Shown here in pieces: positions 939-30,936 of a stretch of 64,000 nucleotides of DNA. The stretch is from positions 1 through 64,000 of the IMG/VR virus record IMGVR_UViG_3300043399_000297. One strand, 5' to 3'. The translations under genes and the position numbers were made by a program. The notes under the pieces were generated by a model. That model was not told where the DNA came from. It saw only the letters and a program-made list of their open reading frames with translations, and did no database searches. Within the stretch, counting starts at the first letter, position 1. Every line of letters begins with the position of its first letter.

Positions 939-1123
939 TAATCCTCCGTATACTCAAAACCGCTAGGAACAACCACTATACTACCGTCAATAAGTGTAAC
1001 TTCATATTCGGTTCTATCTGCACTTAAGCACACACTAGTATATTCACCCTCGTTGATTCCTGCATTACCAAGAGTAGCCTTATAAATCTCAGTCATCATC
1101 TTTTCATATTGTCTACTATTCAT
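938..1123 (-). CDS. Hypothetical protein (61 aa, start MNSRQYEK)
   Basis: ATGA overlap with HNH stop at 1120-1123 makes 1123 the likelier start than 1150. Confidence 0.65.
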   Translation of the reverse strand: MNSRQYEKMMTEIYKATLGNAGINEGEYTSVCLSADRTEYEVTLIDGSIVVVPSGFEYTED

Positions 1124-6236: not shown

Positions 6237-8021
6237 TTAGATTTGCATTGGGCCGCCTGGTGGCGCACCTGCTGCTGCTGCGCCACCAGCTGCTGGGGCG
6301 CCTGCTACTGGACCTGCAGTTTCAGGTCCCATTCCTGCTTCTTCTTCACCTGCCTCAATTTCATCTGCCGTTTCTAAGTCGGTGTCAAAGTCACCAGTAG
6401 ATACACCAATGTTACGTAGATCACTACCTGTAGGTTCTTCAACCTTCTCCTCAGTATTTTCTTCTTCCCAAAGCTTTTCGTTCTTTTTGATTTCTTCTTC
6501 GGTTAAACCTAAGAATCGTTCAAGTGCAAATCTCTTTGAGATATAAGGCAATGCTTCCATTGCAGTAAATGTAGCTGAACGTGCAGTATCCAATTCACTT
6601 TGACGATATGCAGCAAAGTTTTGAGGAGGGTTGAATACTAGATTGAATAGTCCAGTGTCAATATTGAATCCTCTCCAACGCAAGAATAATTTAAATTCTT
6701 CGTCTAGTTTTAGAGCGATATAATTCTGTAGTCTCTCACAATACTGATTAAATCTGAATTCTTGAATCATAGCAGTACCAACACGACCGTCACTCAACGG
6801 AGTCTGACTGTCATCTGGTCCTGTAGGAAGATAGCTTGATGGAACACGAAGACCGCGAGCAAGTCTATTATTGAAATAACGCAAGTCATCAATTTCGCCC
6901 AAGTTCTGGCCGCCGGGAAGAACTTCAACGCTTGATCCACGACCTTCTGCTGTTACAGGGAAGAAGTAGTCTTCATTCATTGAGAGTGGGTTATATGTAG
7001 CATCTACGATTGATTGTCCACCATATAATGAGGGAATTCTACGCTGGTGAATTTCGTTCTTGACTCGTTCAACGAATGCCATAGCCATATGACTTGGCAT
7101 ATTGCCAACGTCAATCTTGAACATTCTACGTTCAGGAGCACGTTGCACACGATAGATTAGAACAGCGTCTTCTAATAGTTCTTTCTGCTTGTAGACCTTA
7201 AATATGTTTTCTAGAATGCTCTGTCCGAATGGCCAGAATCTATCAAGCCCTTCTGTCAAACTCAAGTGAACAATATGCTTACCGTCTACCGCAGACTCAC
7301 TCTGTCCTAGCGTGAAACGTGATCCCGTAGTGTTGTATGGCATTGCGGGAACAGTGTAAGGAGTGTTGGTGCCACCGCCACTGCCCCCTAATCCAGTTGC
7401 TGGATTAGCTGCAAAGTCAGTATTCGTCTTTTGTGCAACACTCAAATTCTGTAGGTTAATGTTCAAATCCTTGAGAACATACTGTTCGGGCTTCTTACCT
7501 TCACTTTCGTTAACAATAACTTTTATGACTTTAACCATATCTACCCAGTATAACTTAAAGTTTTCTGGATCGCGAACAAATACTTGATCTCCATACTTTA
7601 CGACATTTCTAAAAATCTTAAAGATACGAACATCAAATTCATTTAATTTGCACCACTGTTGTAATTGTTTACCTAACAATTCAACTTCGTGTGGTGTCGG
7701 TTCTTCTTTGAATTCAAAAGAGAACGGAGTTTTGTTATGCTCATTGCGCTGAGTACTAAATTCTGCAATAATATCCAAACAAGCATTGATTTCAGCATCA
7801 ACATCCATCATTTCATATTGATTATAACGTTCAATTCTATTAGGGTGACCCGTGTAGACTTCTGGGAGTCTACTCATATAGTTCTTATAGCCGAATTCGG
7901 TATTATTCCAACCACCTGTAGGTGAGTCATTCATCCCATTCCAAGTGCCGCTGTTACTATTGGCACCTGAAATCGGGCTCGACACACCTGACTTGTTTAA
8001 GAATTTCTTTTTATATGGCAT
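6237..8021 (-). CDS. gp20: Portal vertex protein (gp20-like)
   Basis: LLEDAVLIYRVQRAPERRMFKIDVGNMP, EDYFFP, LPGGQNLGEIDDLRYF motifs. Confidence 0.96.
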   Translation of the reverse strand: MPYKKKFLNKSGVSSPISGANSNSGTWNGMNDSPTGGWNNTEFGYKNYMSRLPEVYTGHPNRIERYNQYEMMDVDAEINACLDIIAEFSTQRNEHNKTPFSFEFKEEPTPHEVELLGKQLQQWCKLNEFDVRIFKIFRNVVKYGDQVFVRDPENFKLYWVDMVKVIKVIVNESEGKKPEQYVLKDLNINLQNLSVAQKTNTDFAANPATGLGGSGGGTNTPYTVPAMPYNTTGSRFTLGQSESAVDGKHIVHLSLTEGLDRFWPFGQSILENIFKVYKQKELLEDAVLIYRVQRAPERRMFKIDVGNMPSHMAMAFVERVKNEIHQRRIPSLYGGQSIVDATYNPLSMNEDYFFPVTAEGRGSSVEVLPGGQNLGEIDDLRYFNNRLARGLRVPSSYLPTGPDDSQTPLSDGRVGTAMIQEFRFNQYCERLQNYIALKLDEEFKLFLRWRGFNIDTGLFNLVFNPPQNFAAYRQSELDTARSATFTAMEALPYISKRFALERFLGLTEEEIKKNEKLWEEENTEEKVEEPTGSDLRNIGVSTGDFDTDLETADEIEAGEEEAGMGPETAGPVAGAPAAGGAAAAGAPPGGPMQI

Positions 8022-8047: not shown

Positions 8048-11000
8048 TTAAGTTCGTGAATGTTGTAATATCTTATGGTTAGTATCGTGCGTGTCGTTCA
8101 TTACATCAATCAACTCATCTAATTTCTGTCCTAGTTGTTCAGTGAGTTGCATATTTCTCATATATACATTTTCCGTTTCAGCAGTTTTCGCGGTCATCTT
8201 ACTTGTAGTATTGATTTCTGAAATATTGTCTGCTGGTTTCTTTCCTAATTTAGCTATGATAGATTGAGGATTTAAAGAACCTATTTTGGAATCAAAATCC
8301 CCTTCCCCTTCACCGAAAATGCCGCCGTCTCTTGCTTTACTAATTTTAGTAGCCGGATCAATTGTATTAGACGAATTAGGTACAGCTAGTCCGGCCTTTT
8401 GAATAATATAGTGTAGGTGCGGCCCGGTCGATATCCCTGTACTACCCATATCACCGATATATTGTCCTTGACTTACACGGTCGCCCTCATTAACTCCATA
8501 TTTTGAAGTGTGTGTGTATACTGACTGATATCCATCATCCTGTTGAATTATGATTGCGTTTCCGAATCCAGTATAAGGGCGCCCATTATTAGTTAACTTA
8601 GTAACTATGCCTCCCTTAGCAGCACGTAAAGGTGCGCCCATTCCTTTACCGATATCTAAGCCAGTATGAAACTTCCTCGTACCAAACTTAGGATGTATTC
8701 TCATTCCATATGGGCTAGTTAATACTCCGCCCGCGACAGGGTGAATGTACCCGGCCTTTTCTTCTGCTATTGCATTTTGAGCAGCACTGGACGATGCTGC
8801 GGCATATTGTCCGGCAGCGTCAGCATAGGATTTAGAGTCCGCAGTATTTCCAGCTGCTGCTGATGCTCTTGCTTTATCTCTAGCTTCTTTAGCAAGAGTT
8901 TCATAAAATCTCGCTTTATCCTCTGATCCTAATTTATTTGCGTAATCTATAATCGCTGTTCTTCCCGATTGCATTGTAGGAGGCGGGCCTGCAGGGACTG
9001 AGGCGTTTGGACCGCTACCGGCATTTCCAGAACCGCCATCCGTACTTGCCGGGCCGCTTCCCGGAGGGGCACTGGCAGCAGCAACATTTCCTGCCAGTGC
9101 GCCCACTGTTTGAGCGTACTGTGCAAATGCCGCAGTATTTTTTTCCATATTGGGACCAAACGTCATTCTTGTAAATTTATCGAATGCGTCAATAGGACCA
9201 TCTTGTTTGGTCATAAATGAAACAATATTACCCGCAAAACTACTAAATGCATCCCACGCGCCGGGACCTCCTTTATATTCAGCCAATGCATTGGCAAAAT
9301 CTTTAAAAGCAATTGCATTATTTTTTGTTTTTATTGGATCAATAGGTAACAATGAAAAATATAAAAATTTATCTAGTGGGGGCCGCTCACCAAAAAGCTT
9401 GACTACTGCATTTGACAATGCAGATGCAACAGATCCTAATACCCCTAGTTGACCTTCGCCACGATAAGAAGACAATGCTTCTGCAAATAATTTGAATGCT
9501 GTTGCGTTTTCTTTAGCTCGCTTAGGATCTATCGGTAATTCTGAAAAATCTACAAACTTTTTGAATGGAGGTTCTTTACTAAAGAAGTTACTAACTGAAT
9601 CAGAAATCGCTATTGCGATTGATCCAACCCCTTGCATAGGTCCTGCCACTGCCATTGCCTTTGCGAAAGCTACAAAAGCGCCGGCATTATTTTCTACTTT
9701 CTGCTTATTAATATCATATGCTTGGAATTTTACAAGATTTAATCCTAACGTTTTAATAGGATCTTTATCTTCACCAAATGTAAACCATTCACCGATATTA
9801 CCCAATGCATCTAATATACCCCCGGCACCCATTGCGAGTATGCCGGCTCCCAATCCCGCCATTCCTATACCAGCTGATTTTAAGTTTTCTCCATTTACGC
9901 CATCAAACGATTTCAAACCTTCAGCTAATGAAGGCATAGATTTACCGAGTATCCAAGTCGCGCCGGCAAGGCCTGCACCAATTGCAGCAATTGCTATTCC
10001 TATCGCGCCGGCTCCAAGCGCAACGTATGCTGGGGTAGGAGGCTTACCTATGAAGGCTAAACCTTTTCCTACCCCTTCTAAAAATCCAGCTACTAGTGAG
10101 CCTCCTCCTGTAGCAGAGCCGGCTTTTGATAATCCAGAAACACCTTTACCCAAACCAGAAGGAACAGCTCCTCCTAATTTTCTAGCTCTAGAAGCTCTTG
10201 CTGCTCCACTTAGTGGTTTACCGTTTTTGTCAAGCATATCTGCTTCTGGAATTGCGGCGGGACCGGATTCACTTCCGAAAAATCTTGAAAAAATTCCTCG
10301 TTTATTAGGAGAACTGGTGCCCATTCCCTCAATTTCAGCGATAGCCGGATTGTCCGCAGTACCTAATTTTCCTTTACCCATTCCCAAAACAGACTTAATA
10401 ACGCTACCCACTGACGCAACTGTTTGGATAACCTTACCTACTGCTGCAATTCCAGCAAGTCCTGCCAAAGCAATAGCCAATCCCTTCAAAACTTTGCCAA
10501 TTGTATCTAAATTAGTAACCAAATATTCAGCAGCTTGATTTATCCGTGGCATAATCTTTAGTGCAAGTTGCACAAGATAATCAGAAACAGTTTTTAATAC
10601 GGTATCAAATTGCAGTCTTGCTGCACGTTCAGCCGCTTCTTGTTTACCGCGCTGGTCTGTTGCCCCGCCCTCTTGGTTCTTTTTCTGCTCATATGCGTCT
10701 CGCGCATCGTCTGCAATTTTTCTTAGTGTCGCTTCATCTGCATCTGCTGTCGCCGCGCGCAATTTAATTCTGCCTGCGTCAATTGCATTCTGCGCCATAA
10801 AATCTCTTGAATACTGCCCCAGACCCGTAGCTGCTTCTTTATAATTTTGATTATAATTGTCCAGTCCCTTATTTGAAGCTGCAATAAATTCTAGACGCTG
10901 ATCCATTCCCTGAGATGTTTTAGATACTATATCTAGCAAGCCCGGAATGTTTCTAACCAACGGTGCTGAACTTTCAGTTACTACTGCTTCGCCGGTGGTT

Positions 11001-12088
11001 GATAATAATTCTAGCAACCCTTTTGCATTTTCTGGACTCATTTGTGCTGCCAATGCAGCAAGACCATCCTTTGACTTAATAATATTTTCAAGTCTTAGTT
11101 TTTCGTTTTCGTCTGTTGTCGCAGCGGCTTTTGCTTTTAAACTAGCTATATATGCATTGTAATTTTCATTGGCATACGCAGCCTCGAGATTGTCTTGTTG
11201 TTGTTTAGCACTAACTCCTGTAATATTTGCCAATACATTCAAACTATCCAAATATTGCAATGATGCTTTTTGTAGTTGCTGAGGACTTTTGGTCATATCA
11301 ACACCGGTCTTAGATTGGATTTCCATATACCGAGTTTGCGATTCAATCAAATCTTCCTGAGTATAACCTAACCTACGATATTGAATTAAAGTTCTATCAC
11401 CTACTGCAATAAATTGTCCGAACTTAGTGACCCCTTCTGAAGTAGTAGTACCTAATGCCTTGAGTCCAGGTCCTAATCTAGCAGCATTTTTTGTAAATAT
11501 TTCTAGATTTTGTGACGACAGTCCTGCTTTATGCGCTAATTCCAATATACCTTCTGCACTGGACCCTATTGCTCCCCCTAATTTAGCAACATCGTCATAT
11601 CCTTTTACAACAGCATCATTGTATTTGAACGCTGCTGTCACTAAACTAGAAATAGCGCCCAATAATACAGAAGCAACTTTGCCCAAAGGACCAAAAACTT
11701 CTGCAAGGCCGCCGGCAGCTTCAGTTGCTCCTTTTACACTAGTCGCATATTTGGCCATACCAGGAGTAGTATCTATCATTGCGCCGGCAAAGCCTAACAA
11801 CGCTTTTTTACCCTCGTAAAACGATGCACTAAGTTTTCTATTTGCATCTGCTATCATTTCATTTGCAGCAGCAGCAGCTTCAGTTTTTTTATTGTTTCCA
11901 GTTATTAGGTCATTTGCGGCCTTTTCACTTTTTACTGTGTTATCAACGTTTGTACTCTGAGTTTTTAATGAGGAGTTTAAACTAGATAAATTTTTATTTT
12001 GGGCGCCCAACATATCTGCCTGTTGAGCAAGCAATTCGCTCATCACTCGGAGTTGTTCGTTTAATTGTTCTTCAAGCGCAGTGTCCAT
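8048..12088 (-). CDS. Tape-measure-like tail protein with C-terminal M23 peptidase domain
   Basis: Helical Ala/Gly-rich body with hydrophobic segments; HTGLD (HxxxD) and GPHLH (HxH) zinc-ligand motifs near 8345-8745. Confidence 0.8.
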   Translation of the reverse strand: MDTALEEQLNEQLRVMSELLAQQADMLGAQNKNLSSLNSSLKTQSTNVDNTVKSEKAANDLITGNNKKTEAAAAANEMIADANRKLSASFYEGKKALLGFAGAMIDTTPGMAKYATSVKGATEAAGGLAEVFGPLGKVASVLLGAISSLVTAAFKYNDAVVKGYDDVAKLGGAIGSSAEGILELAHKAGLSSQNLEIFTKNAARLGPGLKALGTTTSEGVTKFGQFIAVGDRTLIQYRRLGYTQEDLIESQTRYMEIQSKTGVDMTKSPQQLQKASLQYLDSLNVLANITGVSAKQQQDNLEAAYANENYNAYIASLKAKAAATTDENEKLRLENIIKSKDGLAALAAQMSPENAKGLLELLSTTGEAVVTESSAPLVRNIPGLLDIVSKTSQGMDQRLEFIAASNKGLDNYNQNYKEAATGLGQYSRDFMAQNAIDAGRIKLRAATADADEATLRKIADDARDAYEQKKNQEGGATDQRGKQEAAERAARLQFDTVLKTVSDYLVQLALKIMPRINQAAEYLVTNLDTIGKVLKGLAIALAGLAGIAAVGKVIQTVASVGSVIKSVLGMGKGKLGTADNPAIAEIEGMGTSSPNKRGIFSRFFGSESGPAAIPEADMLDKNGKPLSGAARASRARKLGGAVPSGLGKGVSGLSKAGSATGGGSLVAGFLEGVGKGLAFIGKPPTPAYVALGAGAIGIAIAAIGAGLAGATWILGKSMPSLAEGLKSFDGVNGENLKSAGIGMAGLGAGILAMGAGGILDALGNIGEWFTFGEDKDPIKTLGLNLVKFQAYDINKQKVENNAGAFVAFAKAMAVAGPMQGVGSIAIAISDSVSNFFSKEPPFKKFVDFSELPIDPKRAKENATAFKLFAEALSSYRGEGQLGVLGSVASALSNAVVKLFGERPPLDKFLYFSLLPIDPIKTKNNAIAFKDFANALAEYKGGPGAWDAFSSFAGNIVSFMTKQDGPIDAFDKFTRMTFGPNMEKNTAAFAQYAQTVGALAGNVAAASAPPGSGPASTDGGSGNAGSGPNASVPAGPPPTMQSGRTAIIDYANKLGSEDKARFYETLAKEARDKARASAAAGNTADSKSYADAAGQYAAASSSAAQNAIAEEKAGYIHPVAGGVLTSPYGMRIHPKFGTRKFHTGLDIGKGMGAPLRAAKGGIVTKLTNNGRPYTGFGNAIIIQQDDGYQSVYTHTSKYGVNEGDRVSQGQYIGDMGSTGISTGPHLHYIIQKAGLAVPNSSNTIDPATKISKARDGGIFGEGEGDFDSKIGSLNPQSIIAKLGKKPADNISEINTTSKMTAKTAETENVYMRNMQLTEQLGQKLDELIDVMNDTHDTNHKILQHSRT

Positions 12089-12094
12089 CTTTTA

Positions 12095-15000
12095 TCAAAC
12101 CCTCATTGCTCTTAATGTTTTTTGTTTAGTGTATTTGTTTTTCTTAGCAATCTCTAATACCTGATCAATCTTTGCTAACACCATGTATCTCATATCATTG
12201 TCATTTTCTATTATTTTTTCTATAGTCAATCCCAGATTTCCTATTATAGGCATCACTGGTTTATCAGATGATGAAATAATGTCTGCTAAGATTTCTTCAG
12301 TATTTTCATCTGCATTCTGTGCTAATCTACTTAATATAGAATTTTTTAATGCCGGGATAATAATTTCAGTGCCGTGCAACTCAATGGGATAACCGCCGGT
12401 AGGGCCTGAATAAAGCCCTCCTGTCCTTGCTATTCCATATCTTTTAGCCATTGTTGCAACTCTATGATCTAAGTCAGCCGTTGTAATTTTACCATCGTGC
12501 GGATTTACATCTAACCCTTTATTTGAGTTATAATATTTTTCCGGTGCTTGTGTTAATACAAAATTATTGTTCCTAGCCGGTAAAAAGATATACCCATATA
12601 ATTTACCAGGCGAAGCTCCTTGCAAATGACTGCGATGAGGAGCCAAGAAAGAATCTACATATTTCATTTGCTGTGCCCTAGGCATTCCCCTCAAGGCACC
12701 GGTTGATGTTCCCATTGCTGCGGCTGTGCTAGGCATAAACTGAATTAGGCCGGTTGCTCCTCCTTTTGGATTTGTAGCAGCAGGATTCAATCCGCTTTCA
12801 GAAGCCATCATTCCCAAAAGATTACCAGGGGCAAAACCATATTTTTGGGAAACTCTGTTAACCTCTGAGAGAAACTCTTTATCTTCTTTCCATGGTCCTC
12901 TAGCTTTTGAAATATCCAGAACATTACCTACGGAGGAAATAGCAGCGCCGGCCATTGAACCTATTGTGCTGGCCGCGGAACTAATAGCATTTCCTGCGGC
13001 AGTTGCTAATCCAACAACTGCCGAAGATATGCCGTTCCCCACTATTTTACCTAAATTCGCAGAGCCTTGTCCGGACAAAATTGACATAGCCACTGCAAAA
13101 TCAAAAAACGCTAAAGCATTTTTAGTGGCGTTGGGACCAAAATTGTATTTCGAAGGGTCACTAAATTTTTGAAAAGCTTCTATAGGACCATCCTGGCTAA
13201 ATAGGTGATTTATAGCAGTTCCTACCATAGAACTAATTTGACTAACTAAATTTCCGGTTCCCTTATAAGATGCCAACGCTTCACTAAACAATCTAAATGC
13301 TGTTGCATTTTCTTGAGTTCGCTTAATATTAATTGGCAAAAATGAGAAGTACAAAAACTGATCAACCGGAGGACGTTGTCCAAAAAATTTCACGGTTGAG
13401 TCAGATATTAATGTAGCTATTTGACCTAGAGTGCTGCCATTTCCCTTAAATGAGAACATGGCACTTGCGTAGTCACTAAATGCCATAGCATTATCTCTTA
13501 CTTTATTAACATTGATATCAAGTGCCTCAAACAATAATAGTTTGTCAAACGGCGGATTCTTTTCGAAGAAATTGCTTACTGCTCGTGCTGCGGCTGATAA
13601 TCCACTTATGCCTTTTAGTAAAGCCATTGCACCCATTGCTTTAGCAAAGGCAATTGCCGCTTCTCCACTTTGCTTAATTTTATCTGGATTTACTCCTGTC
13701 GTCATTGCTTGGAAATTAACTAATTGATCTGCCGCCTTCTCAAGAGAAGATTTTCCACCAAACAGTGTTCCTAGATTGGTAATTGCTTCTAACACGTTTC
13801 CTACACCTAGAGCAATGATTCCAAATCCTATGCCGGCCATCCCTATACCAACGCCTTTAAGATTTTGTCCATCCACTTTGTTAAATGCAGATAGACCTTC
13901 AGCAAATGTAGGTAAAGTCTTTCCTACCATCCAAGTTGCGCCGGCAATGCCGGCTCCTATTTCAGCGATTGCTGCACCTAATGCAGCGGCGCCTAGGGCA
14001 ATTTGACCTGCTGAAGCTGCTGCATTCTTAAATGCTTGCAGTATACCACTTTCATCATTAGTTACATCTTCAGCAATATCGCCACCAATGCCCAATTTAG
14101 CTAGTCGCGAATCTAAAGCTGCGCCGCCCAGGATGTTACCGTGCTTGTCTAATAAATCTTCTTTCCTAAATTTAGGTATAGTAGCGCCTGATACTTTTCC
14201 AAACAGACTAGATCCGGCGGCTAGCCTTATATGTAATTTATTTCTCCGTGAAGATCCAGGTTCTCCGCCGCGTCCTATTAAAGACAAGCCTGCATCTTTA
14301 ATAGACTTAAAAGTGTTTACTACCTTCCCAGCGATTGCAACACCAGACATTATACCTAATATAATACCTAATCCTTTTAGACCGATCTCAATTTCTGGCA
14401 TATGAGTTTTGACAAAAAGTATCGCTTGCGTAACAAGCGGAATCATTTGGTTAATTAATTCGTTTACTTTAGGGGATATAGATTGCATAACTGTATCCCA
14501 ATTCTTACGAATATCACGTTCATAACTTTCTATCTGAGAACGTTCTGCAATCGCGGTATCTTCCTGTCTCTTAGCCTCTTCTAGTTTCGCCTTTTGATCC
14601 GCAGCCATTCTTCTAAAATCAGCAACATTACCTCTACCAAATCTCGCTGCATTTTCTCTGGAGTTATTCCCTATCATATAATAATCTTGAAAGTTTCTAG
14701 ATGCAGCACCCACACTAAAGACTAAACCCTCTGTCTCAGTTTCTGACCTTCTAACCAAATCTCTATTCATTTCAAGTAAATCACCAGTTACATTTTCTCC
14801 TTTACTAAGTCGCGTCATTATACTTAAAAAATTAGGTGCCACTTGTGCTAATTGCGCACTTGAGGCTGTTAACACCGGCGGACCTTTTGTAGATGCAGTT
14901 TCTAATATAGCAGTAGCCATCTTAGGATCAAGTGCTTCAGCAAAGGTTGCCGCTTCTCTTTTAGCATCAATTAATGCTTGAATTTGATCACGTTCTACCC

Positions 15001-15985
15001 CTGTTGTAGCGTTCGCTTTATCTCGCTCTAATTCTGCAATATGGGCCCTAAAATTTTCTTGTTGCATTGCTAGGGCTAATAGATCCTGTTGTTTTTTTGC
15101 ACTTACACCGGTTATCTCCGCCAAAATGTTTAATTTATCAATGTACGCTAGTGAGGCTTTTTGCAATTGTCTAGGACTTTGAGTCATCATTGCCCCGCCT
15201 TCGGCTTGAAGCTTAGCATAATTTGCCATTGTATCTATTAATTCTTCTTGGGTATAACCCATTTTCCTATAATATTGTAAATTCTTGTCACCTACGGCAA
15301 TCATTTGCCCAAATACTTGAACACCTTGCCCTGTTGTTATTCCTAAATTTTTGATGGCAGGGCCCATATCTTCAACTGCTTTGGTCAAATATGTTAATGT
15401 TCCCGAAGACAGATTGGCTTTATGTCCTAAGTCAAGTATGCCTTCAGCACTATTTCCAATTCCGCCGCCCGCTCTAGCAACTTTATCATAACTATCTACT
15501 ATATTATCTTGGAATTTTAAAGAACTTGTTGCCACTTCGCCTATTATACCCACCAGCGACCCGGCTACTTTACCTAATGGGCCAAATATAGATAGTATGC
15601 CGCCGGCAGCTTGAGATAATCCGGTTATCCCGCCGGCATATTTACTCATTCCCGGAGTGCTATCAACTACTGAACTAGCAAAGTTTAAAATGGCATCCTT
15701 ACCTGTTCTCAGTGAGGTAGAAAATTGAGAAGACGCTTCTTCTACTAATCTAGTAGCTTCCTGTGCAGCTTGACTTTTCTTGATATTTCCGGACACTGCA
15801 ACATCGTTTGCGAGCCTTGCTTTTTGTGTATTACTAGTAGCGTTTAATTTATTTTTATTAGAAATATTTACAGAATTCAAAGCGGCGACCTGGCTAGCCA
15901 TAATATTATTTTGTTTGGCAATTAAGTCATTAATTGTAGCAATTTGATCATTCAATTGTGTTAGTAGCTCAGGATCCATTAGCAA
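12095..15985 (-). CDS. Tape-measure-like tail protein with C-terminal lytic transglycosylase (SLT/lysozyme-like) domain
   Basis: Paralog of 8048-12088; MASESGLNPAA (catalytic Glu) and GATGLIQFMP motifs near 12460-12885. Confidence 0.8.
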   Translation of the reverse strand: MLMDPELLTQLNDQIATINDLIAKQNNIMASQVAALNSVNISNKNKLNATSNTQKARLANDVAVSGNIKKSQAAQEATRLVEEASSQFSTSLRTGKDAILNFASSVVDSTPGMSKYAGGITGLSQAAGGILSIFGPLGKVAGSLVGIIGEVATSSLKFQDNIVDSYDKVARAGGGIGNSAEGILDLGHKANLSSGTLTYLTKAVEDMGPAIKNLGITTGQGVQVFGQMIAVGDKNLQYYRKMGYTQEELIDTMANYAKLQAEGGAMMTQSPRQLQKASLAYIDKLNILAEITGVSAKKQQDLLALAMQQENFRAHIAELERDKANATTGVERDQIQALIDAKREAATFAEALDPKMATAILETASTKGPPVLTASSAQLAQVAPNFLSIMTRLSKGENVTGDLLEMNRDLVRRSETETEGLVFSVGAASRNFQDYYMIGNNSRENAARFGRGNVADFRRMAADQKAKLEEAKRQEDTAIAERSQIESYERDIRKNWDTVMQSISPKVNELINQMIPLVTQAILFVKTHMPEIEIGLKGLGIILGIMSGVAIAGKVVNTFKSIKDAGLSLIGRGGEPGSSRRNKLHIRLAAGSSLFGKVSGATIPKFRKEDLLDKHGNILGGAALDSRLAKLGIGGDIAEDVTNDESGILQAFKNAAASAGQIALGAAALGAAIAEIGAGIAGATWMVGKTLPTFAEGLSAFNKVDGQNLKGVGIGMAGIGFGIIALGVGNVLEAITNLGTLFGGKSSLEKAADQLVNFQAMTTGVNPDKIKQSGEAAIAFAKAMGAMALLKGISGLSAAARAVSNFFEKNPPFDKLLLFEALDINVNKVRDNAMAFSDYASAMFSFKGNGSTLGQIATLISDSTVKFFGQRPPVDQFLYFSFLPINIKRTQENATAFRLFSEALASYKGTGNLVSQISSMVGTAINHLFSQDGPIEAFQKFSDPSKYNFGPNATKNALAFFDFAVAMSILSGQGSANLGKIVGNGISSAVVGLATAAGNAISSAASTIGSMAGAAISSVGNVLDISKARGPWKEDKEFLSEVNRVSQKYGFAPGNLLGMMASESGLNPAATNPKGGATGLIQFMPSTAAAMGTSTGALRGMPRAQQMKYVDSFLAPHRSHLQGASPGKLYGYIFLPARNNNFVLTQAPEKYYNSNKGLDVNPHDGKITTADLDHRVATMAKRYGIARTGGLYSGPTGGYPIELHGTEIIIPALKNSILSRLAQNADENTEEILADIISSSDKPVMPIIGNLGLTIEKIIENDNDMRYMVLAKIDQVLEIAKKNKYTKQKTLRAMRV

Positions 15986-16067: not shown

Positions 16068-16892
16068 ATGAATAATAACCCACTTAGACAATATTTTAGG
16101 AGACCGGCAGTTTACCTAAGGCTCCCTTCAGGAGGAAAAGACTATGCTGAGGGTATAATTGATTTACCAGAAAACGGAGAAATTCCGGTATACCCAATGA
16201 CCGCAATTGATGAAATTACTACGAGAACACCAGACGCATTATTCAATGGAACGGCATTAGCAGAACTCATTAAAAGCTGTATTCCAAATATCAAAGATCC
16301 ATGGGCAGTAAGCAGTAATGATATGGATGCTATATTAATATCAATCAAAGCAGCATCAGGCGGCGACACATTGGATATCGATACGGTTTGTCCTGCTTGC
16401 GAAGAATCAAATATTTACGGTATAAATTTATTGTCGATGCTTGCCAGTCTTAAACCTAGTGACTATGAAAAAGAATTAGAATCCGGTGAACTATTCATTA
16501 AATTTAAACCACTCAAGTATAAAGATATGAATGATGCTGCGATCGGTCAATTTGAACTGCAAAGAACTTTAGTCACCTTAGACAATATTGAATCAGAAGA
16601 AGAAAGAAATGCAGCAGGAAAACAAGCACTAGAGAATATCACAAATCTTACAATGGAAATACTCAGCAAGACTATCGATTATATCAAGACTCCTACTATT
16701 ATAGTCCGAGAACAGGAGTATATTCTTGATTTCTTAAGAAACTGTGATAAGAATATTTTCACTGCAATAAAAGATTTTAATACGGAACTCAAAGCTGCTA
16801 GTGAAATTAAACCAATACATATCACTTGCGCAAGCTGCGGTCACGAATACGATCAACAATTTACATTAAGTCCCGTAGATTTTTTCGAATAA
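16068..16892 (+). CDS. gp26: Baseplate hub assembly protein (gp26-like; possibly a tail assembly chaperone)
   Basis: LPSGG, PMTAIDE, two CxxC motifs (CPAC, CASC), C-terminal FF; GAGG RBS. Confidence 0.8.
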   Translation: MNNNPLRQYFRRPAVYLRLPSGGKDYAEGIIDLPENGEIPVYPMTAIDEITTRTPDALFNGTALAELIKSCIPNIKDPWAVSSNDMDAILISIKAASGGDTLDIDTVCPACEESNIYGINLLSMLASLKPSDYEKELESGELFIKFKPLKYKDMNDAAIGQFELQRTLVTLDNIESEEERNAAGKQALENITNLTMEILSKTIDYIKTPTIIVREQEYILDFLRNCDKNIFTAIKDFNTELKAASEIKPIHITCASCGHEYDQQFTLSPVDFFE

Positions 16893-22080: not shown

Positions 22081-22102
22081 ATTTCTTCCTATTATTATGG
22101 TA

Positions 22103-22131
22103 AGTATACTATTAGTGTTGCAAATGTGCAA
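22103..22131 (-). promoter_or_regulatory. Sigma70-like promoter TTGCAC-N17-TATACT driving gp55
   Basis: -35/-10 with 17-nt spacer 22 nt upstream of the 22080 start. Confidence 0.65.
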
Positions 22132-22164
22132 CACTATTGGGTAAAAATACACAGTTTTTATTGC

Positions 22165-26961: not shown

Positions 26962-29900
26962 ATGCCAACAGATGTAAATTTTCCCATTACTAAACCACCC
27001 AAAATTCTATCTCCTCAAGGTGCCGGCGGAAATAGCAACACAACACCCTTGATCGGTGTTGTAAAGGACAATATTGATCCTACTAGATCGGGTAGAATTA
27101 GAGTAGCACTGCAAAGAGGAAAAGGCGCACAAGATCCTAATAGCAGCGAGGGATGGGTAACTGTCCAAAAACTCAGCAACTTTTTTGGATCGGTAGGGGG
27201 AGATGCGGGCACCGACGTTGAAGATCACGGAACTTATAAAACAAACCCAAGCTCATATGGAATGTGGCACGCTCCGCCGGATATAGGCACGCAAGTTGTT
27301 TGCATCTTTATTAACGGGGATCCTAATTATGGATTTTATATCGGTTGTATTCCTGAACCTGAAAAATTACAAATGGTTCCTGCTATAGGTGCAGTTGATA
27401 ACGTTACATTAAACGAAAGCGAAGCTAATAGTTATGGTGGTGCAACTAGATTGCCGACTACTAATATGAACGTAAACAACAAGAGTAAATCTGATAGCGC
27501 ACAATTTTTAGAGACAGCAAGACCTGTACATAGTTACACTGCAAGTATTATGATGCAGCAGGGTATATTGCGTGACGCGGTAAGAGGTCCCATATCATCT
27601 AGTGCAAGCCGAGAAACTGCAAGCCGAGTTGGCTTTGGCGTAAGCACTCCGGGCCGACCTATATACACCGGTGGCTTCGATGATACTAATTTACCTAAAA
27701 ACTTAGAAACCAGTAATAACGAGAAACTTCAAGTGGTGGCTCGTAGAGGCGGACATAGTATCGTTATGGATGACGGTGATGTTATTGGCCGCGATCAGTT
27801 AATCAGAATAAGAACTAGTCTTGGTCATCAAATAATGATGAGTGATGATGGTCAAACATTAATGATATTACATAGCAATGGTCAAAGTTATGTTGAGTTA
27901 GGCAAAGAAGGTACAGTTGATATCTATAGTACTAACAGCTTTAATGTAAGAACACAAGGGGATATTAATTTTCACGCCGACCAAGATATTAATATTCACG
28001 CAATGGAAAATCTAAACATACAAGCTAAAAATATTCATTGTAACAGTGAAGAAATGACTAAGTTCAGGGCCGGCAAAGATTTTAATGTCAATGCCTTAAG
28101 CAATTTTACTGCCAAGTCTGGGTCTGCTGCTGCAATATCAGCTGGTGGCGAAGCAAGTCTAGTAGGAGGTGGAGCTACTTTTGTTAATGGTGCTAAAGTT
28201 AATATCAATAGTGGTGCACCCGGACTTAATCCGCCCGAAGTACCTATTATCACATTAAACGCCCAACCAGATACACTGTTCGATGAAGAAAAGGGCTGGG
28301 CAGCAGCGCCTGGTAAATTATTGACTGTAACGAGCAGAGCGCCGGCACACGCCCCGTGGGCATCGGCAGGACAAGGAATAAGTATCAAGACTTCTGCTAG
28401 CGCGTCAGACAGCTTACCACCTACACCCTCAAATGCAGTGCAACAAGCTAATCAAGCAGGACAGAATGCAAATTCAACCCCTCCTTCTACTGCAACCGTT
28501 GCTAGTGTTCCACAAACCAAACCAGTTAGCCCTTCAGTCGATACGGGAACTACCGGATCAACATTAGCAGCGGTAGGCAAAGCAGCAGCCAACGGAGCGA
28601 CTGCCCCGGCTGTTCAAAAAGGTGCTGCTATTATTTCTAGCGGACAAAACCCAGCAGAAGGCGGGTCCACTGCAACTGTTGCCGCCGGAGCATTTGGTCA
28701 AACTGCAAAACAACTTGCTGATTCAGGTGTAATTAAACCCGGAGCTGATAAACTGATTAATGGTCTTGCAAGTGTTGCTCAAACTGCTGGCAAAGTAATT
28801 GGTGTAACTAAAATACTTAGTAACACGTTGTTTACTGGCCAACAAGGCGCGGAAACAATTGGTAAGTTCGCAACTAATGTTGAAGCTCAAGCCAAGTCAG
28901 TGATCAACACATTGCAAAAAGGACAAACGTTATTGACACAAGCCGGAGTAATTTCCGGTAAAGAAACTCCTACGCAAACAGCCGGGCTTGTCGTTGCGGC
29001 TGCGACTACAGGAGCGAACAATACAATTAATGCCGTTAAAGAGTCTGCTAACAAGCTTGCTGCAATTGGAAATGAAGTAACTGATTTCGGTGATGCTGTA
29101 GGAAATACTATTACTAAAGTTGGAGGGTCGATAGGTGGAGAAGTTGGCGCTACACTTAATAAGGTAAGCGACACTATTAACCAATTCTCAAGTAAAGCAG
29201 CATCAGTTACTAACGCATTAGGTAAAGCATCAAGTGCATTAAATGCAATAGGATCAGGATCTTCTGCTGCTGGACAAGCAGCGTCATTAGGAGGATTAGC
29301 AGGTATTGCTAATGCAGTAGGAGCATTGACAGGAGGCAGTGGTCCTAGTTTATCATCATTGATTAACTCAGTTAATGGTATTGCAGCAGGAGCATATGAT
29401 GCTATCAAGAATGGTTTCCCCAAACTAAAAGCCAATGTACCACAGAAACTATCTGCTATTGCTAAAGAAGCAGCCGCTAAAAGTGCTGCTACTGCACAAA
29501 CTACTACGAATGCAGCCAAGTCAGGTGGGCTAAGCAGTTTAGCTGGAGGTGTTGGAAAAGTATTATCTGGCGCAACTAGTGTCGTTAATACTATTACTGA
29601 GGGTACTAAAACTATTGAAAATACTATAGGCGGGGTCTCCGGCGCTATTAATAATGCAACCGCAACAAGTGGAAATAATAATAATGCGATTAGTGGTGTA
29701 ACTGGCGCAATCGAAACGGGACTGAATAAGCTTACAACCGGCGCACAACAGGTCTCGGGCGTATTATCCGATGCAGGAAATGTAGCTACGTCTCTATCGA
29801 ATATCACGTCCGGCGGAACTGGTAGTAATAGTGTGGGAGGGACATTATCTAATTTGGCTGGAGCAGCAAGTGATGTTACCGGATTCATTAATAAAGCAAC

Positions 29901-30936
29901 TGGCGCATTAGGCGATGTTACAGGCGGAGTTAACAAAGCGATCAACACAGTCAACGGTCTGGCTGGCGCAGGAGCTGCATTGAAGGGCGGACTAAGCGAT
30001 CTTGCAAACGCTGCCAAGAATGTACAAGCCGGGGGCAATGCTGCCAAGGCAGTGCTTCAAGCGGCCGGCATTAATAATTTACCCGGCGGACTTAATGCTA
30101 TCGCATCCGTAGCAGATAAAAAGAATGCTCCCGTACACATTCCGGGCGCAAAAGAATTGACTAACTTAGCAAATACTGTAGGGTCTGGATTAAATGCAGC
30201 TAAAGATGCATTGGGTAAAGTGGGCGACATTGCTGGTAAGGCTAGCGGAGTACTCAATCAAGTTTCAGGAGTAGCAAGTGACGTTTCTGGTGCAGTCGGT
30301 ACCGTTTCTGGTGTCGCCGGCCAAATTGGAGGAGCAGTAGGAGCGGCACAGGGAGCATTAGGAAATGCAACCGGCGATATCGGTAATTTAGCTAACAAAG
30401 TAACTAGTGTTGCTGATAAGTTAGGTGGAGTCGCTAGTGCATTAGGTGATGCAGGAAAGAAATTAAATGGAATTACATCATCAATAACCGGTGCATTGAA
30501 TTCCGGTGAAGCGTCCAGTCTGTTATCAAGTTTGTCTGCATTGGGCGCGGGCGGACCAAGTCCAATCAAATTACCAGAAGTGGGCTTTAATACATTTAAC
30601 AGAGATGGAATCACAAGTCAAGTTAATTCGTTGTTAGGAGATCCCGGTATTCCTAAGCCAAACTTGGTAGGGGAAGTCAGCGATGACACAGTAAACTCTC
30701 TAAATCAAAAAGTTGAAACATCAAGAGAAGCGATTAAGAAAGCAAATGATGAATTGAATCAAGCCATAGCTGATACGCAGATGGCAAAACAAATGGCAAT
30801 TAAGGCAATAGATCAATCTGCTTCACCAGAAAGTGATCCTAATGTTCAGAATTTGAAGAAAGCTTGGCAAGAAAAAGTTAAAATTATGAAGGAAAAAGCA
30901 GACAAGCTTGCAGCGTTAGAGTCGGCAGCAGCTTAG
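26962..30936 (+). CDS. gp5: Baseplate central spike (gp5/VgrG-like) with long Ala/Gly/Ser-rich C-terminal extension
   Basis: OB-fold motifs VKDNIDPTRSGRIRV and PPDIGTQV, GHSIVMDD/GHQIMMSD, beta-helix repeats. Confidence 0.82.
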   Translation: MPTDVNFPITKPPKILSPQGAGGNSNTTPLIGVVKDNIDPTRSGRIRVALQRGKGAQDPNSSEGWVTVQKLSNFFGSVGGDAGTDVEDHGTYKTNPSSYGMWHAPPDIGTQVVCIFINGDPNYGFYIGCIPEPEKLQMVPAIGAVDNVTLNESEANSYGGATRLPTTNMNVNNKSKSDSAQFLETARPVHSYTASIMMQQGILRDAVRGPISSSASRETASRVGFGVSTPGRPIYTGGFDDTNLPKNLETSNNEKLQVVARRGGHSIVMDDGDVIGRDQLIRIRTSLGHQIMMSDDGQTLMILHSNGQSYVELGKEGTVDIYSTNSFNVRTQGDINFHADQDINIHAMENLNIQAKNIHCNSEEMTKFRAGKDFNVNALSNFTAKSGSAAAISAGGEASLVGGGATFVNGAKVNINSGAPGLNPPEVPIITLNAQPDTLFDEEKGWAAAPGKLLTVTSRAPAHAPWASAGQGISIKTSASASDSLPPTPSNAVQQANQAGQNANSTPPSTATVASVPQTKPVSPSVDTGTTGSTLAAVGKAAANGATAPAVQKGAAIISSGQNPAEGGSTATVAAGAFGQTAKQLADSGVIKPGADKLINGLASVAQTAGKVIGVTKILSNTLFTGQQGAETIGKFATNVEAQAKSVINTLQKGQTLLTQAGVISGKETPTQTAGLVVAAATTGANNTINAVKESANKLAAIGNEVTDFGDAVGNTITKVGGSIGGEVGATLNKVSDTINQFSSKAASVTNALGKASSALNAIGSGSSAAGQAASLGGLAGIANAVGALTGGSGPSLSSLINSVNGIAAGAYDAIKNGFPKLKANVPQKLSAIAKEAAAKSAATAQTTTNAAKSGGLSSLAGGVGKVLSGATSVVNTITEGTKTIENTIGGVSGAINNATATSGNNNNAISGVTGAIETGLNKLTTGAQQVSGVLSDAGNVATSLSNITSGGTGSNSVGGTLSNLAGAASDVTGFINKATGALGDVTGGVNKAINTVNGLAGAGAALKGGLSDLANAAKNVQAGGNAAKAVLQAAGINNLPGGLNAIASVADKKNAPVHIPGAKELTNLANTVGSGLNAAKDALGKVGDIAGKASGVLNQVSGVASDVSGAVGTVSGVAGQIGGAVGAAQGALGNATGDIGNLANKVTSVADKLGGVASALGDAGKKLNGITSSITGALNSGEASSLLSSLSALGAGGPSPIKLPEVGFNTFNRDGITSQVNSLLGDPGIPKPNLVGEVSDDTVNSLNQKVETSREAIKKANDELNQAIADTQMAKQMAIKAIDQSASPESDPNVQNLKKAWQEKVKIMKEKADKLAALESAAA

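What the first reader, a model, noticed from the sequence alone, without database searches (positions are those of the whole stretch)
8048..15985. Tandem paralogous tape-measure-like proteins carrying different cell-wall hydrolases
Seen: the two ~1300-aa proteins align by eye over most of their length (TPGMAKYA/TPGMSKYA, FGPLGKVA, GYTQEDLI/GYTQEELI, QLQKASL, TGVSAKQQQD/TGVSAKKQQD, IGAGLAGATW/IGAGIAGATW, ENATAF, QDGPIDAF/QDGPIEAF, ARDGG/ARTGG), but at the equivalent C-terminal position one has an M23 endopeptidase and the other a lytic transglycosylase. Inference: duplication followed by domain swap gives a heteromeric tape measure/ejection complex that cuts both the peptide cross-links and the glycan strands of peptidoglycan.
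Basis: partly seen in the sequence, partly recalled or inferred. Interest (0 to 1): 0.6.

Follow-up and report, generated by a model that had tools for sequence, protein, structure and literature searches.

The report
Tandem tape-measure-like proteins with swappable lysins
An uncultured freshwater jumbo phage with a T4-type core encodes two neighbouring, related ~1300-residue tape-measure-like proteins that carry different cell-wall-cutting enzymes in the same slot, and its relatives hold one to three such genes with at least nine kinds of enzyme.

Summary
Two adjacent minus-strand genes (12095-15979 and 8048-12088) encode paralogs that are 40% identical over about 1000 residues. They diverge completely in a slot near the C-terminus. 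One slot holds a lytic-transglycosylase (SLT) domain, the other an M23 peptidase, both with intact catalytic motifs. A conserved tail of about 100 residues follows the slot.

The shared part is all-alpha, with four 61-residue repeats and conserved hydrophobic, Gly-rich segments. It has no Pfam or PHROG family. It does resemble predicted tape measure proteins by fold. It is also remotely homologous to the virion protein encoded at the same place, just upstream of the portal gene, in the cultured phage 121Q; the match to PA5oct's protein there is weaker.

Metagenomic relatives keep the same gene neighbourhood with 1, 2 or 3 tandem copies. Their slots hold GH24, GH19-like, GH73, SLT, M15/VanY, amidase or unknown inserts. 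Length without the slot, and repeat number, match between copies in one genome but differ between genomes. The central spike protein lacks a lysozyme domain.

Best reading: tape-measure-like, virion-borne carriers of cell-wall enzymes. Co-assembly of the two in one tail is plausible but not shown. I rate this a new variant of a known kind.

The parts
12095..15979 (-). Upstream paralog (P0002, equal to database protein P0016), 1294 aa from the ATG at 15979. The listed ORF begins two codons earlier at the TTG at 15985.
13091..15979 (-). P0016 conserved N part (aa 1-963): all-alpha ruler-like region with hydrophobic segments at about 128-146, 530-557, 660-679 and 707-734
12926..13759 (-). P0016: four tandem repeats of about 61 aa (HMM envelopes aa 741-1018)
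12431..13090 (-). P0016 variable slot (aa 964-1183) holding the SLT / phage-tail-lysozyme-type domain. The confident fold spans aa 1023-1183 (12431-12913). The catalytic Glu1061 codon is at 12797-12799.
12098..12430 (-). P0016 conserved C-terminal tail (aa 1184-1294) with the canonical motif A-R-x-G-G-x-(F/Y)-x-G-P-x-G-G-Y-P-x-E-L-H-G-T-E-x-x-x-P and a terminal amphipathic helix
8048..12088 (-). Downstream paralog P0001, 1346 aa. Its start lies 6 nt after the stop of the upstream gene, with GAGGG upstream.
9110..12088 (-). P0001 conserved N part (aa 1-993): all-alpha in the AF2 model (pLDDT above 90 for about 150-510), with hydrophobic / Gly-rich segments at 135-154, 530-558, 685-715 and 741-759
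9017..9772 (-). P0001: four tandem repeats of about 61 aa (HMM envelopes aa 773-1024)
8336..9109 (-). P0001 variable slot (aa 994-1251). It consists of a Pro/Gly/Ser-rich linker, a helical adapter of about 70 aa shared with M15_4-bearing relatives (about aa 1033-1103), and then the M23 domain.
8381..8674 (-). Peptidase_M23 domain (aa 1139-1236) with H1141-x3-D1145 and H1224-x-H1226
8051..8335 (-). P0001 conserved C-terminal tail (aa 1252-1346). It is the degenerate form of the motif (ARDGGIF..., no HGxE), with a terminal amphipathic helix.
16068..16892 (+). Divergently transcribed T4 gp26-like baseplate hub gene (PF12322). It flanks the pair in relatives too.
6237..8021 (-). T4-type portal gene directly downstream of the pair. 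This linkage is conserved in all relatives examined.
26962..30936 (+). gp5-like central spike / hub protein with the OB domain but no recognisable lysozyme domain

Best explanation
The two genes encode tape-measure-like virion proteins of an uncultured freshwater jumbo myophage with a T4-type core, related to the RaK2/121Q/PA5oct group. Each protein has three parts. The first is an all-alpha 'ruler' of about 1000 residues with 61-residue repeats and hydrophobic, glycine-rich segments. The second is an exchangeable peptidoglycan-hydrolase cassette: SLT in the upstream copy, M23 in the downstream copy. The third is a conserved tail of about 100 residues that probably docks in the baseplate hub. 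Inferred mechanism: the proteins fill the tail tube during assembly and are expelled when the sheath contracts. Their enzymes then open the peptidoglycan locally and their hydrophobic segments help cross the membrane. They thereby replace the lysozyme that T4 carries on its gp5 spike, which this phage's spike lacks. The duplication is old. The copies have kept equal slot-free length and repeat number, which fits both being built into the same tail (hetero-oligomer, unproven). The slot has been refilled repeatedly with different enzymes. Shown: paralogy, domain identities and catalytic motifs, architecture, conserved gene neighbourhood, variation in copy number and cassette, and matched lengths. 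Inferred: location in the tail lumen, ejection, enzymatic activity and co-assembly.
For: Paralogy: 40% identity over about 1000 aa.

Enzyme domains:
- M23 scores 90 bits and has HxxxD and HxH.
- SLT scores 33.5 bits, above the cut-off.
- The catalytic Glu is invariant in a 72-sequence alignment.
- The AF2 model of the domain (pLDDT above 90) matches solved lytic transglycosylases: 9udh at E 2e-8 and TM 0.78, phiKZ gp144, Slt, MltE.

N part:
- It is all-alpha.
- Foldseek hits in BFVD with a name are almost all tape measure or minor tail proteins (E 1e-11 to 1e-3, but TM-scores only 0.1-0.3). They include Atu_ph07 gp197, which lies directly upstream of that phage's portal.
- Language-model features point to TMP_3 and PhageMin_Tail clusters (0.93).
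- hhalign of the family against 121Q gp597, the same-position 'virion structural protein', gives probability 93% and E 3.5e-7 over the first 300 residues, colinear. Some depositors annotate homologs of that protein as tape measure or pore-forming tail tip protein.
- The PA5oct protein in the same position, gp335, carries an ESI-MS/MS virion note.

Gene neighbourhood: the order gp47-gp46-RusA, divergent gp26-like hub, TMP-like gene(s), portal is conserved.

Ruler behaviour:
- Slot-free length ranges from 977 to 1181 aa between genomes but differs by a mean of 15 aa within a genome (permutation p 0.00025).
- Repeat number is 3, 4 or 5 between genomes and equal in 10 of the 11 co-resident sets. 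The exception is L024, where the first of three copies shows 4 against 5 and 5.

Hydrophobic segments sit at conserved positions in both copies.

Missing spike lysozyme: the gp5-like spike has no lysozyme domain, the record has no GH24, and the only SLT and M23 in the record are these two. The spikes of 121Q and Vibrio phage 2.275.O do carry GH24.

Co-assembly: the tail-tail complex prediction gave weak support (0.36 against a best control of 0.01; the runs agree in at least 64% of contacts; partner pLDDT at least 50).
Against: - The N part has no hit to any Pfam or PHROG tape measure family.
- There is no profile similarity to T4 gp29.
- There is no solved structural relative.
- Foldseek matches between long helical models have low TM-scores and may be unspecific.
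- The genes are co-oriented and tightly linked with the portal and head genes. In Atu_ph07 the homologous gene stays with the portal while the gp26-like hub gene lies elsewhere. That would also suit a head-associated ejection protein.
- The phage is uncultured, so there is no virion proteome, tail length or expression data. No RNA run holds the sequence.
- Matched lengths could come from gene conversion; a conversion-like tract is seen in L025.
- The record is only about 71% complete, so another tape measure gene or another lysozyme could lie in the missing part.
Confidence: 0.6

Rival explanations
1. They are capsid-packaged or portal-associated ejection proteins, working like the T7 gp14-16 core or the cyanopodophage A4 pre-ejectosome. 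In this reading they leave through the tail after the DNA channel opens, digest the wall and span the envelope, but do not measure the tail.
For: - The genes sit directly upstream of and co-oriented with portal, protease, scaffold and capsid genes.
- The link to the portal gene survives in Atu_ph07 although the hub gene is elsewhere.
- The SLT domain also matches a chain of the A4 pre-ejectosome (9k2v_A, E 2.3e-3).
- There is no sequence membership in tape measure families.
Against: - Named Foldseek and language-model neighbours of the N part are tape measure proteins. The A4 pre-ejectosome chains appear for the N part only at E about 1.
- Repeat number and slot-free length are held equal among co-resident copies, which has no obvious reason for cargo proteins.
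- No other tape measure candidate was recognised among the large ORFs of the record.
- From general knowledge, contractile-tail phages need a tape measure protein, and no T4-core myophage is known to carry a pre-ejectosome.
Confidence: 0.2
2. Both are tape measure proteins, but they do not mix. Each forms homo-oligomers, so a burst yields virions, or alternative tails, carrying either the glycan-cutting or the peptide-cutting enzyme. This would be bet-hedging against different wall states or hosts.
For: - Copy number varies from 1 to 3. A single copy is therefore sufficient, and extra copies need not be obligate partners.
- The two tails differ: canonical HGTE motif against the degenerate form.
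- The complex prediction gave only weak support.
Against: - The two genes are 6 nt apart in one operon, so both proteins are made together.
- At 40-53% identity in the helical parts, mixed coiled coils are plausible.
- Matched lengths fit either model.
- Nothing available here separates the two models.
Confidence: 0.2
3. One copy is a redundant or decaying duplicate without a role of its own.
For: Related phages manage with one copy (L026; 121Q and PA5oct).
Against: - Both frames are intact, and both enzymes keep their catalytic residues.
- Positional orthologs of each copy are conserved in several divergent relatives.
- Each copy carries a different enzyme.
Confidence: 0.05

Closest known systems
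Phage T5 pb2 (tape measure protein with a C-terminal M23-type muralytic domain and fusogenic hydrophobic segments; Boulanger et al. 2008, cited in PMC10253068; properties otherwise from my own knowledge)
   Same: A long helical protein with hydrophobic segments and a peptidoglycan peptidase near the C-terminus. Homologs of the 121Q same-position protein are even annotated 'pore-forming tail tip protein' by one depositor.
   Different: T5 is a siphovirus with a single pb2 gene. No sequence relationship was detected beyond the M23 domain. Here there are 1-3 paralogs in a contractile-tail, T4-core phage, and the enzyme sits in a slot followed by a conserved tail.
Mycobacteriophage TM4 and enterococcal phage tape measure proteins with embedded lytic-transglycosylase / Rpf motifs (PMC1796659, PMC10194240)
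   Same: A peptidoglycan hydrolase motif embedded in a tape measure protein, acting as a virion-associated lysin.
   Different: Those are single genes in siphoviruses of Gram-positive and mycolata hosts. Tandem paralogs with alternative cassettes are not described there.
T4 gp29 (tape measure / hub protein) together with the gp5 tail lysozyme
   Same: The T4-type core (portal, protease, capsid, gp26, gp25, gp6, gp46/47, gp55 homologs). The gene lies divergent from gp26, as the T4 operon containing gene 29 does.
   Different: There is no detectable similarity to gp29. The proteins are twice as long. The enzyme sits on the tape-measure-like protein rather than on the spike, which here lacks a lysozyme.
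121Q gp597 / PBECO4 / RaK2 family (phrog_14121), PA5oct gp335 and Atu_ph07 gp197: single 730-850-aa virion proteins encoded upstream of the portal
   Same: Same genomic position. Remote homology of the first 300 residues (hhalign probability 93% to gp597, 48% to gp335). Fold resemblance to Atu_ph07 gp197. Similar N- and C-terminal amphipathic helices.
   Different: They are single copy, shorter and carry no hydrolase cassette. In 121Q and Vibrio phage 2.275.O the spike carries GH24 instead.
phiKZ gp181 and T7 gp16 / cyanophage A4 pre-ejectosome (large ejected proteins with a lytic transglycosylase domain)
   Same: A large virion protein carrying an SLT-type domain for wall penetration. The SLT model matches phiKZ gp144 and A4 chain 9k2v_A.
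   Different: The virion lineages are unrelated, the N parts are not homologous, and no tandem paralog set with exchangeable cassettes is known there.

Membership tests
Peptidase family M23 (PF01551) | Profile match above the curated cut-off | tested here: met
   90 bits against a cut-off of 28.7, E 1.2e-25, profile positions 1-94 of 96. The six-frame search gives 95.2 bits.
Peptidase family M23 (PF01551) | Zinc-binding / catalytic motifs HxxxD and HxH | tested here: met
   H1141-T-G-L-D1145 and H1224-L-H1226 in P0001
Peptidase family M23 (PF01551) | Endopeptidase activity on peptidoglycan cross-links | not testable with these tools
   Needs a zymogram or muropeptide analysis of the isolated domain.
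SLT / family-1 lytic transglycosylase (PF01464; PF18013 phage tail lysozyme) | Profile match above the curated cut-off | tested here: met
   33.5 bits against 21.3 and 37.1 bits in the six-frame search. Only profile positions 4-55 of 117 are covered. Relatives with a 55-59% identical domain carry both PF18013 and PF01464.
SLT / family-1 lytic transglycosylase (PF01464; PF18013 phage tail lysozyme) | Catalytic Glu in the E-S motif, followed by a G-L-(M/I)-Q motif | tested here: met
   E1061 in 'SESG' and 'GLIQF' are invariant columns in the 72-sequence alignment A4.
SLT / family-1 lytic transglycosylase (PF01464; PF18013 phage tail lysozyme) | Goose-lysozyme-like all-alpha fold | tested here: met
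   The AF2 model has pLDDT above 90 over aa 1023-1183. Foldseek against PDB finds 9udh, a phage lytic transglycosidase (E 2.1e-8, TM 0.78 by target), then phiKZ gp144, Slt, MltE, MltF and MltC.
SLT / family-1 lytic transglycosylase (PF01464; PF18013 phage tail lysozyme) | Non-hydrolytic cleavage giving 1,6-anhydro-MurNAc (as opposed to lysozyme-type hydrolysis) | not testable with these tools
   Needs product analysis.
Phage tail tape measure protein (functional class) | Membership in a described tape measure sequence family (for example PF10145, PF20155, PF06791, or the PHROG tape measure families) through the non-enzymatic part | tested here: not met
   There are no Pfam or PHROG hits for residues 1-1000 even at E up to 1. 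The PHROG tape measure hits are to the M23 domain only.
Phage tail tape measure protein (functional class) | Long, almost wholly alpha-helical chain with tandem repeats and hydrophobic / Gly-rich segments | tested here: met
   DSSP of the AF2 model is all helix. There are four 61-aa repeats and conserved hydrophobic segments.
Phage tail tape measure protein (functional class) | Resemblance to known tape measure proteins by fold or features | tested here: inconclusive
   Named BFVD hits are almost all tape measure or minor tail proteins, at E down to 1e-11 but with TM-scores of only 0.1-0.3. The Atlas feature score to tape measure clusters is 0.93. There is no PDB match.
Phage tail tape measure protein (functional class) | Protein length sets tail length | not testable with these tools
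   The phage is uncultured and no virion images exist. Indirect evidence only: slot-free length and repeat number are equalised among co-resident copies.
Phage tail tape measure protein (functional class) | Virion component located in the tail tube lumen | not testable with these tools
   Only the remote same-position homologs are recorded as virion proteins (the PA5oct gp335 ESI-MS/MS note and the 121Q gp597 'structural protein' annotation). Their location within the virion is not given.
T4 gp29 family | Sequence or profile similarity to T4 gp29 | tested here: not met
   hhalign of the family profile against gp29 gives probability 0.2%, E 0.32.
121Q gp597 family (phrog_14121, virion structural protein upstream of the portal) | Profile similarity and the same genomic position | tested here: inconclusive
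   hhalign gives probability 93%, E 3.5e-7 over the N-terminal 300 residues only. hmmscan against phrog_14121 gives no hit. The position between the gp26-like hub gene and the portal gene is identical.

The most novel reading that the evidence does not exclude
The tail lumen of these phages holds a mixed tape-measure oligomer assembled from the one to three paralogs. The highest copy number seen, three, would equal the trimeric stoichiometry that I recall for solved tape measure proteins. In this reading each chain delivers a different wall-degrading enzyme, and selection keeps the chains the same length by parallel gain or loss of 61-residue repeats. That would make a combinatorial, evolvable lysin-delivery device that has taken over the role of the T4 spike lysozyme.
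Probability: 0.3. Interest if true: 0.7.

Novelty: new variant of a known kind. Interest (0 to 1): 0.55.

Why it matters
Tape measure proteins with an embedded lysin are known, mostly from siphoviruses. Four things appear to be undescribed in the literature I could search:
- a T4-core jumbo-phage lineage in which the tape-measure-like gene is present in 1-3 tandem paralogs;
- a defined slot in those genes that has been refilled with at least nine kinds of wall-degrading domain;
- co-resident copies that are kept at equal length;
- a spike that has no lysozyme.

If the copies co-assemble, this would be the first heteromeric tape measure. It would also be a natural example of combinatorial enzyme delivery through a phage tail. 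The slot, with its conserved flanks, is a ready-made scaffold for studying how virion-associated lysins are exchanged. It also offers a source of new lysin domains, since the 11-member 'unk2' insert and several others have no family.

Tried and rejected
**Searches of the N part and the locus**
- Megablast of the locus against 50,697 phage records found nothing.
- tblastn with residues 1-1000 found nothing even at E up to 1.
- tblastn with the whole protein hit only M23 domains.
- A PDB sequence-profile search of the family gave only chance-level hits.
- Foldseek of the N-part model against PDB gave nothing at or below E 0.001.
- The Atlas shape search returned only unnamed viral proteins of about 840-860 aa.

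**Comparisons with known proteins**
- hhalign against T4 gp29 found no relationship.
- BLASTP of P0001 against PA5oct gp335 found nothing. gp335 against 121Q gp597 gave only a weak C-terminal match.
- The 'tail tape measure' gp701 of Atu_ph07 named in PMC6102473 is only 205 aa, so I rejected it as a comparator.

**Other candidates and signals in the record**
- I looked for another tape measure candidate among the large ORFs of the record. PHROGs recognised the sheath, terminase, a Lon-like protease and others, but no tape measure. Many large ORFs had no hit, so this is weak negative evidence.
- The T4 late-promoter consensus is not enriched.

**Phylogeny of the duplication**
- The tree of the N parts suggested independent duplications in each lineage.
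- Sliding-window identities and the tree of the tails showed that positional orthology holds, with a conversion-like tract in one lineage.
- I therefore dropped 'repeated independent duplication' for the window's clade.

**Expression and complex prediction**
- Only two DNA runs, from the probable source sample (freshwater metagenome), hold the stretch, and no RNA run does.
- The complex-prediction run on the two C-terminal tails gave weak support only (0.36 against a best control of 0.01). I do not count it as evidence for a heteromer.

**Literature and the giant ORF**
- Literature searches for tandem or duplicated tape measure genes found no true precedent. The two apparent hits concerned chaperone frameshift products and mass-spectrometry homologs.
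- Pfam on the neighbouring giant ORF found nothing.

Full report
**Context**

The window is the first 64 kb of a 244,022-bp virus record. The record is classed as linear, is about 71% complete and comes from a freshwater metagenome.

The genome has a T4-type core:
- On the minus strand: portal (6237-8021), prohead protease, scaffold and a gp23-type capsid protein.
- gp46/47-like SbcCD and a gp55-like late sigma factor.
- On the plus strand: a gp26-like hub gene and a baseplate block with gp25-, gp5-, gp53- and gp6-like genes.

The capsid protein is 65-68% identical to those of jumbo phages Vibrio 2.275.O, Sinorhizobium Phosso and Pseudomonas PA5oct, and 63% identical to 121Q-like coliphages. 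This is therefore an uncultured member of the RaK2/121Q/PA5oct-like jumbo myophages.

**Checking the observation**

The two ORFs exist as described. BLASTP gives 40% identity over 1015 aligned positions (E = 0), colinear from residue 1, and no similarity afterwards.

Pfam places Peptidase_M23 at 1139-1236 of the downstream protein P0001 (90 bits). It places SLT at 1043-1094 of the upstream protein (33.5 bits). Both scores are above the curated cut-offs. These are the only M23 and SLT matches in the whole record.

The M23 domain has HxxxD (1141-1145) and HxH (1224-1226).

The SLT-type domain was examined further:
- It is 55-59% identical to domains that carry both PF18013 and PF01464 in other long metagenomic proteins.
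- In a 72-sequence alignment the catalytic Glu (E1061, 'SESG') and 'GLIQ' are invariant.
- An AlphaFold2 model is confident (pLDDT above 90) over aa 1023-1183.
- That model matches solved lytic transglycosylases. The best is 9udh (E 2e-8, TM 0.78 by target), followed by phiKZ gp144, Slt, MltE, MltF and MltC.

The upstream gene most likely starts at the ATG at 15979, which has AAGG six bases upstream. That gives 1294 aa and equals database protein P0016. The downstream gene starts 6 nt after the upstream stop, so the two look like one operon together with the portal gene.

**Architecture**

A word-index search with residues 1-1000 found 76 proteins, nearly all from metagenomes. Their alignment shows three parts.

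*1. A conserved N part of about 900-1100 residues.* The AF2 model is entirely helical. It has a confidently modelled region at about 150-510 and low-confidence Gly-rich or hydrophobic stretches at 526-612 and 640-718. Kyte-Doolittle peaks sit at equivalent places in both paralogs. The last 250 residues are four tandem repeats of about 61 residues.

*2. A variable slot of 70-280 residues.* Clustering of the slots, Pfam scans and the Pfam domains precomputed for the database proteins give:
- GH24 lysozyme: 23 members.
- A GH19-like group: 19 members. Only two have a Pfam GH19 hit; the rest are grouped with them by BLAST clustering.
- An unknown 150-residue insert ('unk2'): 11 members.
- Peptidase_M15_4 / VanY, SLT / Phage_lysozyme2, Amidase_2 and GH73 glucosaminidase.
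- M23, seen only in P0001.
- Several singletons.

P0001's slot shares a helical adapter of about 70 residues with the M15_4-bearing relatives. The catalytic domain was therefore exchanged behind a common adapter.

*3. A conserved tail of about 95-110 residues.* It begins A-(R/K)-x-G-G and ends in an amphipathic helix with a basic end. One form has G-P-x-x-G-Y-P-x-E-x-H-G-T-E-x-x-x-P, as in P0016. The other is degenerate, as in P0001.

**Genomic context in relatives**

Contigs carrying family members keep the order gp47-gp46-RusA/PDDEXK, a divergent gp26-like hub gene, the tape-measure-like gene(s), then portal, protease, scaffold and capsid genes. Copy number varies:

| Locus | Copies | Slot contents |
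|---|---|---|
| L026 | 1 | GH24 |
| Window | 2 | SLT + M23 |
| L002 | 2 | unknown + GH19-like |
| L003/L004 | 2 | M15_4 + unknown |
| L023 | 2 | GH73 + GH19-like |
| L025 | 2 | GH24 + weak VanY-like |
| L024 | 3 | weak VanY-like + unk2 + GH24 |

P0078 (SLT) and P0045 (M15_4) are both recorded on a contig of the same length (100,520 bp), so they probably form another pair. I did not fetch that contig.

Pairing a glycan-cutter with a peptide-cutter therefore recurs but is not universal.

**Age of the duplication**

A tree of the N parts groups paralogs within lineages. Sliding-window identities tell a different story:
- P0001 is closer to the second-position proteins of L002, L023 and L025 (58-77% over residues 68-217) than to its own neighbour (48-53% over residues 68-289).
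- P0016 shows the same trend, most clearly towards L002's first-position protein.

The tree of the tails also groups by position. The duplication therefore predates these phages. In L025 the central third of the two copies is much more alike (48-56%) than positional orthologs are (24-36%), which suggests gene conversion.

**Is it a tape measure?**

Direct family membership fails:
- There is no Pfam or PHROG family for the N part.
- There is no similarity to T4 gp29.
- There is no solved relative.

Indirect evidence points towards a tape measure:
- Foldseek against BFVD returns, among named hits, almost only tape measure or minor tail proteins (E 1e-11 to 1e-3, but TM-scores only 0.1-0.3).
- One of those hits is an 845-aa Atu_ph07 protein. 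It turns out to be gp197, encoded immediately upstream of that phage's portal.
- Language-model features are nearest to TMP_3 and PhageMin_Tail clusters among named clusters.
- The family profile aligns colinearly with the first 300 residues of 121Q gp597 (hhalign probability 93%, E 3.5e-7). It aligns weakly with PA5oct gp335.
- Both of those are the single 730-800-aa proteins encoded in the same position. 121Q gp597 is annotated as a virion structural protein, and PA5oct gp335 carries an ESI-MS/MS note.
- Some depositors call gp597 homologs 'tail length tape measure protein', 'putative tape measure protein' or 'pore-forming tail tip protein'.
- The gene lies divergent from gp26, as the T4 operon containing gene 29 does.

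The most telling internal evidence is ruler-like behaviour:
- With the slot excluded, length ranges from 977 to 1181 residues among genomes. It differs by only 4-30 residues among copies in one genome (mean 15; permutation p = 0.00025).
- Repeat number is 3 in the single-copy L026 and 4/4 in seven pairs. It is 5/5 in three pairs, including L002, the window's closest relative. L024 shows 4/5/5. Repeat number is thus equal in 10 of the 11 co-resident sets.

Parallel change, or conversion, that keeps the copies equal is what one expects if they lie side by side in one tube. Shared ancestry and conversion are confounders.

**Functional setting**

The gp5-like spike (26962-30936) has the OB domain but no lysozyme domain. 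The record holds no GH24 at all. In 121Q and Vibrio phage 2.275.O, whose proteins in this position lack a hydrolase, the spike ORF carries GH24. PA5oct and Atu_ph07 do not fit this pattern so cleanly.

The parsimonious reading is that in this lineage wall digestion during entry has moved from the spike to the tape-measure-like proteins.

**Heteromer**

The single complex prediction, for the two C-terminal tails, reached the mark only weakly. The score was 0.36 and the best control 0.01. The runs agree in at least 64% of contacts, and partner pLDDT is at least 50. In the tool's calibration, 5 of 78 solved complexes and all 4 passing mismatches scored at or below 0.60. For paralogs, a pass also cannot separate hetero- from homo-association. 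Co-assembly therefore remains an inference from operon structure and matched lengths.

**Verdict**

- The proteins are best described as tape-measure-like carriers of virion-associated lysins with an exchangeable enzyme slot.
- They belong to a mostly uncultured freshwater jumbo-phage family in which the gene occurs in one to three tandem copies.
- Embedded lysins in tape measure proteins are known (T5 pb2, TM4, enterococcal phages). The tandem paralog set, the defined slot and the length matching are a new variant.

Noticed in passing
window 34949-55207 (+): A single 6752-aa ORF directly after the gp6-like baseplate wedge gene. Neither half has a Pfam hit at E 0.001 or below. It is presumably a giant baseplate or fibre protein.
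   Followed up: partly
window 26962-30936 (+): The gp5-like central spike (1324 aa) has the OB domain (PF04717) but no lysozyme domain. The whole 244-kb record has no GH24 match, whereas the 121Q and Vibrio 2.275.O spikes carry GH24.
   Followed up: yes
window, whole (the one match is at 59097-59104, minus strand): The T4 late-promoter consensus TATAAATA occurs once, against 10.5 expected from shuffles, although a gp55-like late sigma factor is encoded at 21187-22152 (-). The late promoter of this lineage probably differs from T4's.
   Followed up: no
window 1120-1875 (-): A homing endonuclease gene lies immediately downstream of the major capsid gene, as in PA5oct and 121Q.
   Followed up: partly
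L024 1492-13024 (Logan contig of SRR29317081): Three tandem tape-measure-like paralogs (1276, 1236 and 1310 aa) with different slots: weak VanY-like, an unknown 150-aa insert, and GH24. L026 has only one copy (GH24).
   Followed up: yes
L025 4932-12492: The central third (about residues 290-600) of the two paralogs is 48-56% identical to each other but only 24-36% identical to positional orthologs. This is a conversion-like tract and explains why N-part trees group paralogs by genome.
   Followed up: partly
P0090, P0091, P0109, P0110 (metagenomic proteins, 790-970 aa): Other phage-like proteins carry an M23 domain and this same SLT type in one chain. That is the single-chain counterpart of the two-gene arrangement in the window.
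   Followed up: no
L028 4532-7069 and L022 5510-6127 (Atu_ph07, NC_042013.1 157531-160068 and 482509-483126): The 845-aa 'hypothetical protein' gp197, just upstream of the portal, is the structural match to the family. It is a better tape measure candidate than the 205-aa gp701 that the record and PMC6102473 call the tape measure protein.
   Followed up: partly
slots of P0028, P0030-P0032, P0035, P0041-P0044, P0046, P0047: An insert of about 150 residues ('unk2') fills the enzyme slot in 11 family members and matches no Pfam family. It may be an undescribed wall-degrading or wall-binding domain.
   Followed up: no
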